This document shows, piece by piece, positions 17,100 through 48,277 of a DNA stretch of 64,000 nt (positions are counted from its first letter, which is position 1; every line of letters starts with the position of its first letter). The position numbers and the translations under genes are program-made. The notes under the pieces are model-generated. The model saw only the letters and a list, made by a program, of their open reading frames with translations. It ran no database searches and was not told the DNA's origin. The DNA comes from Podarcis erhardii (taxonomy: Eukaryota). Location: assembly GCA_964252035.1 (NCBI GenBank), contig OZ176204.1; one strand, 5' to 3'.

Positions 17100-20000
17100 A
17101 AGTTTTATATTTCTCATGGAGGGTTTTATTTTAAAAGTACAAATTATTTCTCCATAAGATTGAGTTTTCAGATAGCAATGATGTTTTCATCCAATATTCT
17201 TTTTTTATTTATTTAAAAATCCGTAACATGTCCATAATATTCCAACAACAATAATTGCCATTACATCGCATTAGAAACCGACCCAAATTATACATGGTTG
17301 CTGCGTAGAATTGATTTTTCCTTTTGCTGTTTAGTGTACAAGTGATAGGAGGGGATTGTTAAAAAAACACCTTTCAGAAATAGCACGGTAGGGCGAAAAA
17401 TAAAACATTTTAATTCATCTTTATAAAAAGAAGCACCGAAGCTTCGTAAATATTTAAAGATACAATAACACTACGCAGAATTTGTACAAATATCCTTTTC
17501 AAATAAAGAAACATTAAAACCCTGGGGGAAAACTGCATCTATTGGTAGATTGGGAACTGAATTTGGATTATAATGTTCCTTGTAAACGACACATGATTTT
17601 GAAATCAGTTTTTTAAAAAATGAGATACCCTTATCTACTGAAGTTCCTGTATTGAATCGTGAGGAATCATCCATTGTGTGTTTCCTTACCCATTCATCCT
17701 AGAAGATGTAACCTTAAATTTGGAAAATACCTAGGAGAACGTCTCCCCCCCGCTTTTTTTGACCTATACCATCTATGCAGAAGTAAGTGATTTACATTTA
17801 CTCCCGGGTAAATGTGTATCTGATTGCAGCCTTACAGCTCAATCCTCGTTTACCCGCAAGTCCCACTGTTTTCAATGGGGCTTACTCCCATGAAAGCGTC
17901 ATTAGGAGTCATCCTTACTCCGCTATCTTTTCCCACACTCCCTTTTAAGAATGATACCAACTCCACGATTTTTCTCTCCCCATCCACACTCCGTTTTGCT
18001 GAAGTCTCAACTTTTGGAGATCTCAAAAACTTTCTCACTATTTTGTGACATTTTTGTTGGCCTAATAAAAGTATTGCCCTAATACTATGGTGTGGGTAGG
18101 TGGGAGTTGCGTTGCGTTTCTTCTTTTGTCTATATTTTTCATTCTGATTAAGGCAAGTGCTATTTAAACCTCAATCCTGAATAAATGCCTAAATTTAAGA
18201 TGAATCTCACTTATTTCAAAGAAGCTTATTACTTCAGAAATTGTTTAGGACCACAGACTAGAGTCCCGCTGGAAACATTTCAAAACTAACCACGATACAT
18301 AGAAGTCATTATTATTTATTTCACTAGGACTTATTTCACATATGGATTGGAACTGATGATGTACAATTGGTTTAAACGACAAATCCTTCTGCTAACTGAG
18401 GTATAGACTGGGTGACTGCGAATTACACTTCCTAAGACAGCCTCCATAATGCAAGGCCCGGTATCTTCCAATAAACAGGCACCAGCTCTTCTTTCCTCAG
18501 CCTCTGAGCCAACAAAAACTTACTGGGATCACTGCCAATAGTTTACACTCAGCACTTGGCTGCGACAAAAGAGGGCCCAACAACGATGCTACCATTTCAT
18601 GGGGACCCAAAACTACCAGTGTGGCAGAAATGCTAAACTGGTGAGCAGTGTATTCTCCAAGCCACTATCTCATTCCCAAAGACATCTATGGACTCTAGAG
18701 TTTGGTGTTGTTGTTTTCTCCTCCCAATTGAGAGTACCAAGTTGCGGAGTGAGTGGAATGCTGTTACTTTTCTTTCCACTCGCTGACAATAAAACATTGA
18801 GACATATGGAAGCCATCGCTTTGAAGGCGTAACCATTTTAGTGCACTGCAGTAGAGAAACGTGTTTTTTGATAGGTAGTCTCAGCATCAACAGGAGCCGA
18901 GCCTGCAATAAAGGCATGTACGAGCTGTTGCATTCTTTATACTGGGATAATGGGATGGTAGCGAGGGTCTGCAGCTACAGACTTGGTGCTCATGGATGGC
19001 GTTCGTAGGAAGTTGGGTTTTGTGCAAAGAACAAAGGCTTGGGCAGAATTCCAGCAAATGAGTTCGGAATAGAAGATCCAGTCGGGCAGTTCCTCTGGGG
19101 CTGAGAAGTTCGGAAAGCAGAAGGGATCCTCTCTCGCTCTCGTTCTCTACCCCCCTCTCGTTTCCCCCTCCCACCCTCCCCACCCTAGAGCTACACGCCC
19201 CCCTCCACCTACAGAGAGACAGACATAGGCAGACAGACGTAGGTAGATGTATGTATCTGATTGTATACTGGGACATTTTCTGTCTCCATCCCAACGTTAT
19301 CTTTTAAGAAGTTTGGTTCCATCTCTTTAGAAACGGTCCCAGCTAACGGGGCAGAGGGAGTTTGACAGAGGGGAGAACAAATCGCTGACAAAGAACCTTT
19401 TTACGTTTCATCAGCGTTGTTAGGGCGACGAGGAGGAATTTCTCAGATAATAACTCCCACTTCAAAGATTTTTCAGCTCAATAGAAATTGGACCATCCTT
19501 TTTTATTCAGCCACAAGGGCTAGCACTAAAGACGACTCGACTGTTTGAATTTTTTTTTTTGTTCGGCGTGTTTATTTTTCCCCTATTCACTGGGGTACTT
19601 GGATAAAATAAACAAGAAGACAATTACTGGAACATGGACTTCTAACTTTCCCGGGACCGTGGCCCATCGCCCGTGGCCTCAGACTTGGGAGTGTCAACTT
19701 CTGTAGCCCTGGAAGGCATTAAACCCTAATTTCTTGGGACATGGTTTTTGCCACACACCTAGGATCTAGTCCTTGTTTGTTTCCGTGAAAGAGTCAAGAA
19801 ATTCAGAAGATTCCTCAGTCTTTGTTCTGGAAATGGTATCCCTTTCTAGTTCAGTCTCTATCTTCAGCAGTGTGTGTGTGTGTGTGTGTGTGTGGATGTG
19901 ACTGTGTGTGTTTACAAAGAAGGAAATAGTGTCAAAAAGCAACTTAAAGCCGCAGCATTCAGCAAGGAGCTGGACCCTAAGGAGGATGGAGTCAGACACA

Positions 20001-20968
20001 GAAATATCGAAATGTTACTTGCAAAGCAAAGATCAGCAAATGTATACATTTATGAATAAGAATATTGACACCAACCACTGTTGGGACCGTACTTGTAGGC
20101 TGTCTTAGGGTTAAGGCTTGGGGCGTGGAGACAAGAGTTTTGTGAGCTCACTAGTAAACAAAACTGGTCCACTACTGACTTGCTCCTGAGCAGTCCTATT
20201 CTAGCCAGGTGGGCTGCTTTGAACAAAAGTGGGTCCTCTACTATTGAGTCCCAGCCCCAGATTTCCATGGTGCAAAATTTCACTCGGCACTGGTAGCTCT
20301 TATAAAACCGCCTCGCCCCCCCCCGCCCCTACTTCTGTTTCTTAATCGCAGAGATCCAAGATGCTGCAACAAAAGCCCTCCTTAGAGAGTAAGCCAGCAA
20401 AGCAAGCCAAAGGGGACGAGATGGAGGAAGTCCATCTCTGAGGAAGAGCAGATTGAATGTATTAAGCTAGCATGAAACCAAAGGTCAGTGCAAATGTATC
20501 TTAATAGACTGTCTCGAATGGAGTGTGCCTCCTTTTCAAGGGCGCTTGCTATTGCTCTGCTCATTACCATAGCGATCCTAACGTGGCATGTTGATGCACC
20601 ATAAAGCTCACACTTTCAACCCCCACCCTCCAACCAAAAAAAATAAAATAAAAATCAGAGCCTTTGAACAAGGCCGGGCTTGATTAGACCTTTCTCCTTT
20701 TCTTTTCCCTCCTTCAAACCCATTTCCTCGCCTTTAGAAAAGTCGCCATCAAATCCCAAAGGCCGTCTCTGATCATGGCCCAGAAGGAGAGAAACAAAAG
20801 TGAACTGGCGGACGGCGATTCAGGCGGCCCCCTTTTTCTTCCTGACATTATTATCCATTCTGATTATGGGCTGGAACAAGGACCCCCATTCGCGTGGGGG
20901 TTTTCTTGCCCCGGAAATTCGGAGGGAAAATATGCATACTCCACGTCCATCACGAACACAACATACAA

Positions 20969-21002
<34 letters not shown>

Positions 21003-21347
21003 TGTAGTTTTGGCACTGTTGGGGTGTTTTCTTTTTATATATATATATACATCGGTGAGGATGGGAGAAAGAAACTGAGCCGCGAGGGGATGGGGAGAAA
21101 GAGAGAGAATCTGTTAGACCTAAATATTATGTCCTTCATGAAAAGACTGGACGGGCTCCAGACTTCGCTTTTCACTCTTTTTAAGTATGACTTGCCTATT
21201 GCTATAGAAATCTTAACTCACCATGAAGATTCACCGTTGCGAAGAAATACTTTCATTGTGAGAGACTGCTTTGATGTCTAAGGCATAAGATGCGGGGCTT
21301 TTCAGCTGCCTCTGTCTAGATTACCTTGAGAGCAACGGGATAGACAT
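17100..21347 (-). other. ZIC4: ZIC4 terminal exon (1 coding nt plus 3'UTR); 5' boundary well supported, 3' end tentative
   Basis: Minus-strand acceptor GGCTAATC (branch, ~31 nt upstream)...TTTTTCATTTGCTTGTTACAG|ATGTCTATCCCGTTGCTCTCAAGGTAATC at 21348|21347. Joined to GAA TG at 23908 it forms TGA. The exon start resembles the human ZIC4 3'UTR start as I recall it. AATAAA on the minus strand at 17204-17213 and 17125-17130 suggests the far end. Confidence 0.7.
17760..17917. mobile_element. two MITE-like copies sharing a central TTA
   Basis: ...GATTGCAGCC-TTA(17832-17834)-CAGCTCAATCCT...TCCCACTGTTTTCAATGGGGCTTACTCCC...TTAGGAGTCATCC-TTA. Confidence 0.65.
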
Positions 21348-23639
21348 CTGTAACAAGCAAATGAAAAATTAAAGGTGATTAGCCTACACATCCAAAAACC
21401 GCTTCTGCAAAGAAAGAAATCAAGAAGAAAAGGGAGAGGGAGGAGGAGGGCCGAGGGACGGAGCCGGGAGGGGGCAACCCAACTCCAGACAAGGTGGAAG
21501 CATCTTTCGCAGATGGCCTCCATCCATCCATCTCTACCTTCTCATTTCCACGACGGCTCCACTAGATCAGAGGGAGTAAACGAGCAGCAGCAGTAGTGGC
21601 AACGAATATCTTGTTTTGGTTTTTATCCTGAGAATCGGGACGGGATGGTTATTTCTTTGTTTGCTATGTTTCGTCCATTTAACTCGGCGATCTATTAAGG
21701 ATCTCTCGCTGAGGCAGTGAGAAGGAATGGGGAACCAAGTCATGCACATTGTTCAAAAGGTAGATAGGTGATAGAGGGATTGATACCCAGATAGGTAGAC
21801 TTTCTTCTATTTATTTTATTTTTTAAATTTAATGCGAATGCCTGAATGACATCAACCGCCCCATCTTCAGACGTAAGTACCACGGTGTTCACACTTCACT
21901 GGGATGTCCCAATGAACTCAGTGGAACTTACTTCCGAGTAAATAAGCATATGGTCCTGCTGCACAAGGAAGATAGAGAGAAAGAAAGAGTTCAGAAATGT
22001 GGGAATGTTAAGGAAGGTAGGAGAGGATATATTGTTTTGATATTATCCCTCCTCACTCACGCTCAGAGCACATTCCCTTTGGAGCCACATTCCCCTGTGT
22101 GTCCATTCTAGGCAACAGGAAAATGTTGTACTTAACTGCTCTAGTAATAATACCTCCCACAAGAAATAAGAAATTTCTGTTGGTGGTGGTGTGTGCATGG
22201 CTAACCCAAAGACTGGGCTGGACGTTTTGCTTCACTCTCCTTCACTGAACTGAAGGAAATGGCTTTGTAGAAGTGTTTTGGCTAAGATCTTAGAGCGCCT
22301 ACAGACAAATGGGCCTTTCCATAGTTTAAAAATCGATTAGAATGAACCACGCCCCCTCCCTCATTCCTAAATATACTGCCTGTAAATAAGTTTCATTGAA
22401 GTATATGGGTCTTACTACAAAGTGATGCGTTTAGGAGCTACAATCAGTAAATGAAATCCATATAATAATATTTCCACAAGCATTCCCCCCCCCCCGTCTG
22501 GGGAATTCGCTAGAGACAAGGACTCACATAGGGCTGATAAGAATCATATAGCTTTAAAGACCCCGACATATGTTCAAGATTTTAAAACCATTTTATTTTT
22601 ACCTTTACAAAAAATAATAATTAATATTTCGAATTGTTATTTTACATAACTACTGTTGTGCGTTTGAAAACCAGACCACCACTGGGTTTACACCACGGGT
22701 TCAGAAAAAATCGACACGTCGTGAATCCTTTTGGACAATCCAAGCAACTCAACACAATTACGTCACTCATAACAACTCCCCCCCCCCCTTCTCTCCAATT
22801 AACATGGATCTCACCTTCCATCCACTAAGGAATCACAAGAACTCACAATTCAACAGAAATAATGCGAGGGAGGGGGAAGAGAAAAGGAGAATATGTTTAT
22901 GCATTTAAATCCATTACTAGTGTAAATTAGAATGTACCATAAATCATTAAGCCACCCTTGGGTCTGTTTTATTAGTGACAACTGGGAAGAATATACTGGT
23001 GAAAAGGGGGCAGTAAAGAGATCCCCCCCCCGAAAAAAAAACGTCAACTGAACTGGTAAATTAATCAAAGTATTTAATTGATCGATTTGTTGTACAGTTC
23101 GGTAACAAATAATATATTTATAGATACTGATGTTCCTTTTTGGGAGAAAAAAAGCACACGCACACAGCCCCCCACCCCCGCCAAGAAACCCAATTAAAAT
23201 CCAGACACTGGGCTAATAAAACTGTCCAAGAAAAAACACCATCACAAGATACCAGCACCGACGATCGCAGCTGTACAGCTAGAAATCCGTATTAAAACAC
23301 TTTGGTTCATTGATACAAAAGGATGTTTCCATTCAAATCGAGGCCATTGTAAACGTATGGGAAGGAGTTGGTCCGCGGAGTCTGCCCTGGGAGGGTGTAA
23401 AATAAAAAGAAGAGCTCATGGAAAGAGGTGCGGGGAGGGGGAGGTGGCGGGAGGGGGGGTTGCTGTCCTCTGTGCCATAATAAATACAAAACGGGGATGG
23501 GGGAGAGAGGGAGGAGGTTTGTCCACCCCCCCCCCATGTATCTTCTCTCCGATAGCCTGTGCAGCATTTCTGATCGAAGGTGACTGACTGGGGGAAGAGG
23601 GAAGAGGCTGGGTAGGGGGGAGGGGAGGGGGAGGGGGCT

Positions 23640-24430
23640 TGCTCCCCAGGCCTGGGATCGATTTCCGCCCCTCCCCCAAGAACCGGGCCTTGCCGACCCG
23701 CCGTTCGTCCAGTTTGAGCCAAGGATCCACAGCACCCCGAAAAGAACAATGCAGTTTCGCCGCCGCCGGCGGGCCATCCTACCGTATTGACTTTAATAAG
23801 TGGGCCGGGGCTCGCAGTTCGTGTAAGCGGCCTCTCCCGGGTGAGGTGACGGAGAGTTACTGGGTGGAGTCGGGATGCCGCTGGCCCCTGAGCTCTGACA
23901 CACGTACCATTCGCTCAGGTTGGCTGCCGCCTGGGTGGAGGAAGCCGCTGCGGGAGGCGGTGGCGGTGGCGGCGGCGGCTGAGGGGGCTCCCGGCCGCAG
24001 TCCGACGACGGCGACACCAGCGACGGGGTGGACGACTCGTAGCCGGAGCTGGGAGGTGGGGACTTGCAGTGGACTTTCATGTGCTTCCGCAAGGAGCTGG
24101 GGTGCGTGTAGGACTTGTCACAGCCTCGCACTTTGCAGTTGTAGGGCTTGTCGCTCGTGTGCACGTGGGAATGCTTCTTCCTGTCGCTGCTGTTGGCGAA
24201 GCGGCGCTCGCAGCCCTCGAACTCGCATTTGAAGGGCTTCTCGCCTGCAAGGAAAAGAGGGAATCCAGGGAGACTTTGCGTAAAGGACCAGGGTGGGGAA
24301 AGGTGCGGGTGTGCGTGTTTTATTGGGGTGGCGTGTCTGCAGGTCACAGGTTATTGAGCGATGAGCTCTGTGTCGCCCTCGCCCCACCTCGCTTTCCCAG
24401 CAGTGGCCGTGGAGCCAAACCCAGCAGAAG
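23640..24430. promoter_or_regulatory. CpG island over ZIC4 coding exon 2
   Basis: Very high GC and CpG density. Confidence 0.7.
23793..24244 (-). CDS. ZIC4: Zinc finger protein ZIC 4, coding exon 2 (ZF4-ZF5 and C-terminus). Read-through form ends at TAA 23795-23793; spliced form uses the donor after 23908
   Basis: Acceptor CCCTCTTTTCCTTGCAG|GC at 24245|24244 completes the phase-1 Gly. Encodes [69 protein letters not shown] and the lack of an intron at HMK|VH are ZIC4/ZIC5-type features. Confidence 0.95.
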
Positions 24431-28971: not shown

Positions 28972-30160
28972 CTGTGTGCGTCCTTTTGTGGATTTTGAGA
29001 TTTTCCGAGCGAGCGAAGACTTTCCCGCATCCCGGGAAAGGACAAGGGAAAGGTTTCTCCCCCGTGTGGACTCGGATGTGGTTGACCAGTTTGTATTTGG
29101 CCTTGAAAGGCTTCCCTTCCCTGGGACACTCTTCCCAGAAGCAAATGTGGTTGGACTGCTCCGGCCCTCCAACGTGCTCCACGGTGACGTGAGTCACCAG
29201 CTCGTGCATGGTGCTGAAAGTTTTCGAGCATAATTTTTTGGGAGTCTGGTCCAGTTCGATCCACTTGCAGATGAGCTCCTGCTTGATGGGCTGCCTCATG
29301 TAGCGGAAGAAAGCCCCAGGGCCGTGGTGTGGAGCTAAATTCACGTTCAGGTTCATGCCACCGTAGCCGTGGAAGGAGGAAGCAGCAAAAGGATCTGTCC
29401 TGGAGACTGGTACTGGCGTGAAAGGTTCAGACCTGGCATACATTTCTCCAGGTAGCCCCAGCCTTATCTGTCCGTTTAGATGGCCACCTGGAGCTGCATG
29501 GGGAGGTTGCTCATGGTGGAGTCCAGTAAAAAGCGAGGGAGTTCCGGCTTCTGAGTGGTGGTGGTGGAGGTGGTGGTGGTGGTGAGCATGGTGTCCGGGG
29601 TAGCTACCTGTTGTTGAGACAAACATTCCATGGTGAGAACCTGTAGCAGCAGAGTGTTGATAAGGGAGCCCTGGCATGACTGGGGCTGTCAGATCTCTGC
29701 GCAGGAAGAATTCCCTACCTGATGAAAGAGCATGACTTGGGTGAGGGACTGCGTAAGGGACTGTTGTTGACTGCGCTGGGCCAAATGCTCCTGCTGGACT
29801 GGGTACCACCTCGGCTTGGCCTGTCACAGGATGGTGGGGATGAGGCTGAGGGGCAGGGCTGAGCTTAAGGGCCGCTGAGTGATGAGGAGGATGAGAGTGG
29901 TGGCGGTGGTGATGATGATGATGATGGAGAGGATGGTGGTGCTGCCCCATGTGTTCTGACCGGAATGGACTCAGCCCGAGGCGGCTTTCTGCAGCGTACT
30001 CCCCAGGGTGCGTGGGAACCATGGAGTGGGGATGCCCGGCGAAGCCTGTCATGCTCTGAGGGGAGTGGTGATGGTGGCGGTGATGACGATGACGAGGAGC
30101 CCCTGCCAAGCCTAGTATTTTCAGCGCCGTGTTCCGTTTGGAGAGTGAAGCAGAGTCCAT
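28972..30160 (-). CDS. ZIC4: Zinc finger protein ZIC 4, coding exon 1 (His-rich N-terminus, divergent ZOC-like motif, ZF-NC, ZF1-ZF3)
   Basis: ATG at 30160. [14 protein letters not shown] (ZIC4/5-type SKRN motif)...[19 protein letters not shown]...KIHKRTHTG, then donor ACAG|GTCAGT at 28972|28971. Head-to-head with ZIC1, which fixes the identity as ZIC4. Confidence 0.95.

Positions 30161-48079: not shown

Positions 48080-48277
<198 letters not shown>

What the first reader, a model, noticed from the sequence alone, without database searches (positions are those of the whole stretch)
21347..23908. Two alternative ZIC4 C-termini: the conserved EWYV codons double as a splice donor whose junction creates a stop
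GAA TG|GTACGT (23908|23907) lies within the open frame. Splicing across a 2560-nt intron to the acceptor at 21347 yields GAA TG|A, so the protein ends ...AAANLSE* (508 aa). Without splicing it continues [38 protein letters not shown] (546 aa). From memory, human ZIC4 ends ...ADLSE while fish and frog Zic4 keep a WYVC... tail, so this genome appears to retain both options. The splice would remove the family-conserved EWYV motif.
Basis: partly seen in the sequence, partly recalled or inferred. Interest (0 to 1): 0.7.

Follow-up and report, generated by a model that had tools for sequence, protein, structure and literature searches.

The report
Two ZIC4 protein endings, one splice
This lizard's ZIC4 brain-patterning gene can end its protein in two ways: read on into an ancient 38-residue tail, or splice inside the conserved EWYV codons and stop at once. 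Both forms are already annotated in other lizards, birds and mammals, so the finding is real but ordinary.

Summary
ZIC4 lies on the minus strand, with exon 1 at 30160-28972 and exon 2 starting at 24244. GAATG|GTACGT sits at 23908|23907 and ttacag|A at 21347. Joining them gives TG|A and a 508-aa protein. Reading on gives 546 aa.

The motifs alone prove little. The donor is forced by the Trp-Tyr-Val codons, and a crude filter found 13 other acceptor-like sites in the interval. Comparison singles out 21347:
- The tract before the acceptor, the CAG and the A are conserved in skink, duck, caecilian, toad, dolphin and catshark, but not in eel.
- The RefSeq coding regions of duck and caecilian ZIC4 end exactly on that A.
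- Pogona vitticeps RefSeq carries both forms: X1 with the tail and X2 ending ANLSE.

The tail is under strong protein constraint (dN/dS about 0.04-0.055) and resembles arthropod Zic tails, so the unspliced form is probably translated too. A conserved ATTAAA at 23078 suggests that the read-through mRNA ends inside the "intron".

There is no RNA evidence from this genome.

Verdict: real, probably used both ways, already known from annotation.

The parts
28972..30160 (-). ZIC4 coding exon 1: ATG at 30160, His-rich N-terminus, ZF-NC motif, zinc fingers 1-4. The donor is ACAG|GTCAGT at 28972|28971.
   Evidence: Pfam zf_ZIC, zf-C2H2_15 and zf-C2H2. Best hits are squamate ZIC4 at 82-88% identity.
23908..24244 (-). 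Part of exon 2 shared by both forms: the rest of zinc finger 4, zinc finger 5 and the region up to ...AAANLSE plus TG.
   Evidence: The acceptor is ttgcag|GCGAG at 24244.
23902..23910 (-). Internal 5' splice site ATG|GTACGT, which lies inside the Glu-Trp-Tyr-Val codons.
   Evidence: The same GARTGGTAYGT is present in skink, duck, caecilian, catshark, toad, eel and dolphin.
23793..23907 (-). Coding sequence specific to the read-through form: (W)[16 protein letters not shown]...EPRPTY and the stop TAA at 23795-23793.
   Evidence: dN/dS is 0.041 against the caecilian and 0.055 against the toad. Arthropod Zic proteins carry a similar tail.
23792..23797 (-). ATTAAA hexamer overlapping the read-through stop codon.
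   Evidence: TATTAAA is also present in the skink and caecilian, but not in the toad, shark or duck. Whether it is used is unknown.
23032..23078 (-). Candidate proximal poly(A) site inside the 'intron': ATTAAA at 23078-23073, followed by a GT/T-rich stretch at 23048-23032.
   Evidence: The hexamer and its flanks are conserved in skink, duck and caecilian. That it works as a poly(A) site is inferred, not shown.
21348..23907 (-). The 2560-nt interval that is an intron in the spliced form. In the read-through form it holds the coding tail and the 3' UTR.
   Evidence: The homologous interval is 2499 nt in the skink, 2221 in the duck, 1927 in the caecilian, 2702 in the catshark and 1488 in the toad.
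21348..21385 (-). 3' splice site region: a CTAAT branch-like motif, the pyrimidine tract and CAG.
   Evidence: Alignments A1 and A3. The tract is nearly invariant from lizard to caecilian and dolphin and mostly kept in the catshark. Cross-species conservation starts about 40-50 nt upstream of the acceptor.
21111..21347 (-). Distal exon, whose first base A completes TGA, within a deeply conserved block. Two conserved donor-like sites lie inside it: AAG|GTAATC at 21325|21324 and ATG|GTGAGT at 21222|21221. The 3' end of the exon is unresolved.
   Evidence: Blast blocks that end at 21111 and start 35-150 nt upstream of the acceptor are 79-91% identical to the skink, duck, caecilian, toad, catshark and dolphin. 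The duck and caecilian coding regions end on the homologous A. Bat and swan protein models read into this exon.
20448..20919 (-). Second conserved downstream block. It may be distal 3' UTR or a separate conserved non-coding element.
   Evidence: 74-83% identity to five tetrapods; the catshark matches only 20616-20439, at 87%.
19410..19678 (-). Third conserved downstream block, containing AATAAA at 19576 and 19507. These are possible distal poly(A) signals.
   Evidence: for the signals.

Best explanation
This is the last coding exon of ZIC4 in a squamate; earlier notes of the scan call the animal a wall lizard. The exon can be finished in two ways.

(a) If the internal donor at 23908 is not used, translation continues through [17 protein letters not shown]...PTY and gives a 546-aa protein. 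The mRNA then probably ends at a conserved ATTAAA site near 23078, inside what would otherwise be the intron.

(b) If the donor is used, it joins to the conserved acceptor at 21347. TG plus A makes a stop exactly at the junction. The protein is 508 aa and ends ...ANLSE, and it carries a different, deeply conserved 3' UTR.

By analogy with ZIC1, the tail that is removed includes a motif needed to hold the protein's activity down. The switch would then produce a tailed form and a tail-less form that is possibly more active or differently regulated.

Shown here: the sites, the frames, their conservation, their exact match to orthologous annotated coding ends, and the protein-level constraint on the tail.

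Inferred: that both mRNAs are made in this animal, that the proximal poly(A) site is used, and any functional difference between the two proteins.
For: Sites and arithmetic.

Identity as ZIC4: Pfam zf_ZIC; best hits are squamate ZIC4; ZIC1 lies on the other strand and ends NFNEWYV* at 48263.

The spliced form is real in relatives:
- Proteins ending ...NLSE or ...DLSE are annotated in Pogona X2, Laticauda, opossum, wombat, chicken, ducks, crows, a caecilian and many mammals.
- The annotated coding regions of the duck and caecilian end at L002:24597 and L003:17743. Each is exactly the A after the conserved CAG.
- Bat and swan models read into the same exon from other frames or donors.

Acceptor conservation: the pyrimidine tract, CAG and A are kept from lizard to catshark and dolphin. 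Conservation begins about 40-50 nt upstream of the acceptor, as expected for a 3' splice site.

The read-through form is real:
- Tail dN/dS is 0.04-0.055 with synonymous sites saturated.
- The tail is present in squamates, turtles, frogs, fish and sharks.
- Arthropod Zic proteins carry a similar tail.

Both forms in one lizard: Pogona X1 is 561 aa and X2 is 522 aa with the same N-terminus, and an older annotation release has the same pair at 519 and 480 aa.

Proximal poly(A) site: ATTAAA with a U-rich downstream stretch, conserved in four tetrapods.

Function of the motif: in ZIC1, removing the last 11 residues, which include NEWYV, increases activity in a frog embryo assay. The same paper says the motif is present in all human ZICs except ZIC4 (PMC4564895).
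Against:
- The runs that hold this stretch are probably DNA.
- The RefSeq and Ensembl isoforms of other species are models, and I could not inspect their transcript support.
- The acceptor sits inside a roughly 290-nt element conserved across jawed vertebrates, in a locus I know from general reading to be rich in conserved non-coding elements. Some of its conservation may therefore have nothing to do with splicing.
- The eel keeps only the distal half of the block, not the acceptor.
- By a crude pyrimidine count the acceptor is not the strongest candidate in the interval.
- If the distal exon ends at 21222 and is followed by another intron, the junction stop would lie 125 nt upstream of an exon junction. 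The spliced mRNA might then be a decay target rather than a productive message.
Confidence: 0.72

Rival explanations
1. Only the read-through (546-aa) form is made in this lizard. On this view the conserved block at 21400-21110 is a non-coding regulatory element, such as an enhancer of ZIC1/ZIC4, that happens to contain a CAG. The ...LSE isoforms in non-mammals would be annotation carried over from mammals.
For: - The whole block is conserved, not only the splice signals, and the eel keeps only its distal half.
- Most squamate database entries show the tailed form.
- The tail is strongly constrained.
- There is no RNA evidence from this genome.
Against: - Conservation begins just upstream of the acceptor, at the branch-like motif and pyrimidine tract.
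- The duck and caecilian coding regions end exactly on the A.
- Independent models in swan, wagtail, pigeon and bat enter the same exon from other donors or frames.
- Two successive Pogona annotation releases keep an ...LSE isoform beside the tailed one.
- An Ensembl sea-snake model also ends ...LSE.
Confidence: 0.12
2. Both splice choices occur, but the spliced mRNA is mainly a way to lower expression. On this view the distal exon is internal, ending at the conserved ATG|GTGAGT at 21222. The junction stop then lies more than 50 nt upstream of a later exon junction and the transcript is degraded, as with a poison exon. The tail-less protein would matter little in this lineage.
For: - Two donor-like sites inside the block are conserved. 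AAG|GTAATC is kept in tetrapods and shark, and ATG|GTGAGT in all species examined, including the eel.
- A pigeon model splices onward after the first 23 nt.
- From general knowledge, very high non-coding conservation around an alternative exon is typical of regulated unproductive splicing.
Against: - Bat, wagtail and swan models read straight through AAG|GTAATC, which suggests a longer exon.
- Nearly all mammalian reference proteins fetched here end ...LSE, which argues that this mRNA is productive at least in mammals.
- If the exon were only 23 nt, the stop would be 22 nt from the next junction. That is too close to trigger decay under the usual 50-55-nt rule (established knowledge).
Confidence: 0.1
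3. Only the spliced (508-aa) form is functional, and the open frame after 23908 is intron sequence that happens to stay open.
For: In birds and mammals the sequence after WYVCQ has decayed into Gly/Pro/Ala-rich text of no conserved sequence.
Against: In this lizard the tail matches the skink in 36 of its 38 residues, and other squamates, turtles, amphibians and a shark carry the same tail motif. dN/dS is 0.04-0.055 while synonymous sites are saturated. The motif is shared with arthropods.
Confidence: 0.03

Closest known systems
Mammalian ZIC4 C-terminus (...DLSE) and the annotated isoform pairs of other amniotes: Pogona vitticeps X1/X2, Anas and Aythya X1/X2, Cygnus olor
   Same: The donor lies inside the E-W-Y-V codons. 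The homologous acceptor's first base A completes TGA. The two products are the same: a tail-less ...LSE form and a WYVCQ... form.
   Different: In mammals and birds the read-through tail has degenerated, so only the spliced form looks meaningful there. In this lizard, as in Pogona, both the tail and the acceptor are intact.
Composite terminal exon with competing splicing and poly(A) site use, the class typified by immunoglobulin mu secreted versus membrane mRNAs (established knowledge)
   Same: There is an internal 5' splice site in the last coding exon, and a poly(A) signal lies between that donor and the distal acceptor. The C-terminus and 3' UTR therefore switch together.
   Different: Use of the proximal ATTAAA at 23078 is inferred from conservation only. 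Here the distal exon adds no residues, only the last base of the stop codon.
ZIC1 C-terminal NEWYV region (Twigg et al. 2015, PMC4564895)
   Same: The family motif is the same. In ZIC1 its loss by truncation raises activity, which suggests what the ZIC4 splice might do.
   Different: In ZIC1-3 the protein ends right after NEWYV and the loss is pathological. In ZIC4 the loss would be a normal isoform choice, and it also removes a further 35 residues that ZIC1-3 lack. No functional test exists for ZIC4.
ZIC3 isoform A versus isoform B. PMC4564895 says only isoform A carries NEWYV; my memory is that isoform B arises by alternative splicing.
   Same: It is another family member in which one isoform lacks the motif.
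   Different: As I recall, a different intron and a different alternative exon are involved. I did not examine this here.

Membership tests
ZIC4 (Zic family, subclass B) orthologue | Zic-type first zinc finger followed by C2H2 fingers 2-5 | tested here: met
   Pfam zf_ZIC (E = 1e-27), zf-C2H2_15 and zf-C2H2 on exon 1, and zf-C2H2 on exon 2.
ZIC4 (Zic family, subclass B) orthologue | Closest relatives are ZIC4 rather than ZIC1, 2, 3 or 5 | tested here: met
   Nearly all of the top 100 hits that carry a name are named ZIC4. ZIC5 proteins first appear at 53% identity. The segment [21 protein letters not shown] is shared with ZIC4 of all vertebrate classes.
ZIC4 (Zic family, subclass B) orthologue | Divergently transcribed pair with ZIC1 | tested here: met
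   A ZIC1-like C-terminus...NFNEWYV*, lies on the plus strand at 48263, with ZIC-like exons at about 47.0-48.2 kb. ZIC4 is on the minus strand. The duck, eel and dolphin loci show the same neighbour.
Junction-stop ZIC4 short C-terminus (...LSE*) | Donor TG|GTAYGT inside the EWYV codons | tested here: met
   Present in all seven other species examined.
Junction-stop ZIC4 short C-terminus (...LSE*) | Homologous acceptor whose first base is A | tested here: met
   The duck and caecilian annotated coding ends fall on that base.
Junction-stop ZIC4 short C-terminus (...LSE*) | The junction is observed in RNA of this species | not testable with these tools
Composite terminal exon (splicing versus intronic polyadenylation) | Poly(A) signal and a downstream U/GU-rich element between the donor and the acceptor | tested here: met
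   ATTAAA at 23078-23073 with a T-rich stretch at 23048-23032, conserved in skink, duck and caecilian. This is sequence evidence only.
Composite terminal exon (splicing versus intronic polyadenylation) | mRNA 3' ends mapped at the proximal site | not testable with these tools
   No reads could be laid.
Poison-exon or decay-coupled splicing | Stop codon more than 50-55 nt upstream of a later exon junction | tested here: inconclusive
   It depends on where the exon opening at 21347 ends. The candidates are 21325 (stop 22 nt from the next junction), 21222 (125 nt) or no further intron. Models of other species disagree.

The most novel reading that the evidence does not exclude
The ZIC4 C-terminal switch is not an amniote peculiarity. 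It would be a device about 450 million years old, conserved across jawed vertebrates: the acceptor, its tract and the stop-completing A are already present in a catshark. It toggles an ancestral bilaterian Zic tail (EWY[VI]CQ...PTPPS, shared with arthropods) that acts as a brake on activity. Birds and mammals then let the tail decay and kept only the tail-less form. The unusually conserved distal exon would carry a further regulatory role, either mRNA control or decay-coupled splicing.
Probability: 0.3. Interest if true: 0.5.

Novelty: already known. Interest (0 to 1): 0.3.

Why it matters
ZIC proteins pattern the neural tube and cerebellum. The C-terminal NEWYV region is the one part of ZIC1 whose loss causes a gain-of-function disease, craniosynostosis (PMC4564895).

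ZIC4 is the family member that appears to shed this region as a normal isoform choice. Animals such as this lizard keep both the tailed and tail-less versions intact. That makes them a natural system for asking what the tail does, a question mammals cannot answer because their tail has decayed.

For the genome scan itself the result is modest. It confirms a correct reading of raw sequence, but the isoform pair is already in public annotation of related species.

Tried and rejected
**RNA reads.** The look-up of sequencing runs listed four RNA raw-read runs of 'organism A' (X21-X24). It also listed many small runs that hold 25-45% of the stretch and are probably DNA capture data.

It served as the subject of an offline tblastn with bird and bat protein tails, and as the text for a poly(A)-hexamer scan. 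Nothing was taken from those places. Later scripts left them out or masked them.

**Spliced cDNA contigs.** I looked for spliced cDNA contigs of squamates through a fragment-length protein search with exon 2. It returned only genomic-looking or fish and mammal fragments, plus an Ensembl sea-snake model ending ...LSE. There was no squamate transcript contig.

**Look-ups that found nothing.** Pogona X2 and opossum X3 loci were not on record, because only the longest product per gene is kept.

**Rfam.** No family matched window 19410-24300.

**Literature.** Four searches found no paper describing the EWYV codons as a splice donor in ZIC4. Only PMC4564895 discusses the motif.

**Acceptor at 21404.** This site would also give TGA, but I rejected it because its AG is absent in the skink and the duck.

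**Joined model.** The joined (spliced) protein was never submitted to a search.

**Human sequence.** None was fetched or compared.
Full report
**What is in the sequence**

On the minus strand the window carries a ZIC4 gene. Exon 1 starts with ATG at 30160 and ends at a good donor, ACAG|GTCAGT, at 28972|28971. Exon 2 starts at 24244 behind ttgcag. Pfam finds the Zic-specific first finger and the following C2H2 fingers.

A word-index protein search with exon 1 returns ZIC4 of squamates as the best hits: Lerista 88%, Salvator 86%, Pogona 84%, Crotalus 82%. Earlier notes of this scan call the animal a wall lizard. I did not test that.

ZIC1 lies on the opposite strand and ends ...NFNEWYV* at 48263. 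This is the known head-to-head ZIC1/ZIC4 arrangement described in PMC7403390.

**The observation**

GAATG|GTACGT is at 23908|23907 and ttgcttgttacag|A is at 21347, exactly as reported. Spliced, the coding sequence is 1189 + 337 + 1 nt, giving 508 codons plus TGA. Unspliced, it is 1189 + 452 nt, giving 546 codons plus TAA at 23795-23793.

**Is it more than chance?**

The donor carries no independent information. Trp-Tyr-Val must be written TGG TAY GTN, so every Zic gene with this motif has G|GTAYGT, including ZIC1 in this window.

Acceptor-like sites are common. A crude filter (YAG behind at least 11 of 14 pyrimidines) finds 13 in the 2.56-kb interval. It does not even list 21347, which scores 10 of 14. 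One of the 13, at 21404, would also give TGA.

The case therefore rests on comparison, not on the motifs.

**Comparative evidence for the splice**

I fetched the ZIC4 loci of a skink (L001), tufted duck (L002), caecilian (L003), catshark (L004), spadefoot toad (L005), eel (L006) and dolphin (L007).

- All seven have GARTGGTAYGT at the homologous place.
- Between 1.5 and 2.7 kb downstream, every locus except the eel has the same element: a CTAAT-containing stretch, the tract TTTAATTTTTCATTTGCTTGTTACAG, then ATGTC... (alignments A1 and A3).
- The base after CAG is A in all of them.
- Cross-species similarity begins about 40-50 nt upstream of the acceptor and is weak or absent before that. This is the pattern expected at a real 3' splice site.
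- The annotated coding regions of the duck and caecilian proteins that end ...ANLSE stop at L002:24597 and L003:17743. Each is exactly the A after the conserved CAG.
- A bat model, and swan and wagtail isoforms, read into the same exon in other frames or from other donors. The swan and bat tails were mapped onto it.
- Proteins ending ...NLSE or ...DLSE are annotated in Pogona vitticeps, a sea snake, opossum, wombat, chicken, ducks, crows, hoatzin, a caecilian and many mammals, including non-human primates.

**Comparative evidence for the read-through form**

- Window and skink differ at only 2 of the 38 tail residues.
- Against the caecilian and the toad, synonymous sites are saturated (19 of about 27) while only 7-10 of about 90 non-synonymous sites differ. 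That gives dN/dS of 0.041 and 0.055.
- The caecilian is annotated only as ...LSE, yet it keeps an intact, conserved tail ORF.
- The tail is present in turtles, frogs, salamander, lungfish, coelacanth, ray-finned fish and sharks.
- A similar sequence, NLSEWY[VI]CQSAAGMPTPPS.EHSP, ends arthropod Zic proteins such as those of a tick and a barnacle. It therefore looks like an ancestral Zic C-terminal region.
- In birds and mammals the text after WYVCQ has decayed into Gly/Pro/Ala-rich sequence.

**Both forms in one lizard**

Pogona vitticeps RefSeq has X1 (561 aa, with the tail) and X2 (522 aa, ending ANLSE) with identical N-termini. An older release has the same pair at 519 and 480 aa. Ducks and swans show the same pairs.

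These are database models and I could not inspect their transcript support.

**How it probably works**

Inside the 'intron', an ATTAAA at 23078-23073 is followed by a T-rich stretch at 23048-23032. The hexamer and its flanks are conserved in the skink, duck and caecilian.

I read this as the poly(A) site of the read-through mRNA, which would give it a 3' UTR of about 740 nt. Exon 2 would then be a composite terminal exon:
- Cleavage at the proximal site gives the tailed protein.
- Use of the internal donor removes the tail and the proximal site together, and attaches the distal, highly conserved exon.

This step is inferred from sequence only. A second ATTAAA overlaps the stop codon itself (23797-23792). 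It is shared by the skink and caecilian only.

**What the distal exon is**

The block 21400-21111 is 79-91% identical from skink to catshark, which is more than the coding exon. Two more conserved blocks follow, at 20919-20448 and at 19678 onward.

Two donor-like sites inside the first block are conserved. AAG|GTAATC lies at 21325|21324. ATG|GTGAGT lies at 21222|21221, and this one is kept even in the eel, which lacks the acceptor half.

Bat, swan and wagtail models read through the first of these, while a pigeon model splices there. AATAAA signals lie at 19576 and 19507.

So the exon may be 23 nt, 126 nt, or a terminal exon of about 1.8 kb. In the 126-nt case the junction stop would sit 125 nt before the next junction, and the mRNA could be a decay target. 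I cannot decide this without transcripts.

**What it may do**

Twigg et al. (PMC4564895) showed that deleting the last 11 residues of ZIC1, which include NEWYV, raises its activity in a frog assay as much as larger truncations do. They also state that the motif is conserved in all human family members except ZIC4.

The present anatomy explains that exception: the ZIC4 splice cuts inside the motif. By analogy, the 508-aa form may lack a brake that the 546-aa form has. No ZIC4 experiment bears on this.

**What failed**

There is therefore no RNA evidence from this genome.

One offline script still used the whole window as the blast subject and as regex text. I declare this, and I took nothing from those places. 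Later scripts excluded or masked them.

I never searched the joined spliced model; exons were searched apart by reference. I fetched no human sequence.

**Novelty**

In four literature searches I found no paper that describes the motif codons as the ZIC4 donor. Even so, the isoform pair is in public annotation of a lizard, of waterfowl and of many other species, and the spliced form is the reference protein in most mammals seen here. It is an already known feature that was correctly read from raw sequence.

The less obvious points are three: the acceptor is conserved back to sharks, the tail is of bilaterian age, and a conserved proximal poly(A) site may exist. These are worth a note but do not change the class.

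Noticed in passing
window 48263-48277 (+): ZIC1 in the same window ends ...NFNEWYV followed by TAA. It is written GAATGGTACGTTTAA, so the same latent GGTACGT donor is present but is followed at once by the stop.
   Followed up: partly
window 24133-24141 (-), around AAA|GTGCGA in zinc finger 5: Wagtail isoform X5 (...YNCK then MSTPLLSR) appears to splice from a GT inside finger 5 to the same distal acceptor. The lizard has that GT (tgcaaa|gtgcga) and would read MSIPLLSR followed by a stop. The distal acceptor therefore seems to be a hub for several donors.
   Followed up: partly
window 21180-21250 (-); L006:16002-16062: About 60 nt around ...CAACGGTGAATCTTCATGGTGAGTTA... is about 80% identical from lizard to eel, and almost unchanged in catshark and dolphin, although the eel lacks the acceptor half of the block. 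This core may have a role of its own, as a conserved donor, an RNA element or an enhancer.
   Followed up: partly
L002:22375-22410 and L007:21470-21500, compared with window 23907-23880: The duck and dolphin share the sequence GTACGTGTGTCAGGGCGCGGG just after the donor, with G-runs that the lizard lacks at that spot. G-runs downstream of a donor are known splicing enhancers. This would fit a shift towards the spliced form in lineages whose tail has decayed. It is speculation.
   Followed up: no
window 29590-30160 (-), exon 1: Several squamate and bird ZIC4 models (Pogona X3 at 403 aa, Phrynocephalus at 383 aa, Heteronotia at 384 aa, Anolis X2 at 397 aa) are much shorter than the 546-aa form. 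Pogona X3 and Phrynocephalus replace the long His-rich N-terminus with a short alternative start. The gene therefore also has N-terminal isoforms. Another note of the scan (s1-259161) concerns this.
   Followed up: no
window 20975-21045 and 19880-19905 (-): Short (CA)n and (TA)n microsatellites lie between the conserved downstream blocks.
   Followed up: no
runs X1-X14: Many small runs from five organisms hold 25-45% of the 3.2-kb stretch. These are probably conserved-element capture libraries drawn to the conserved blocks. The held share is also about what exon 2, the proposed proximal 3' UTR and the distal block together would make, so RNA cannot be excluded.
   Followed up: no
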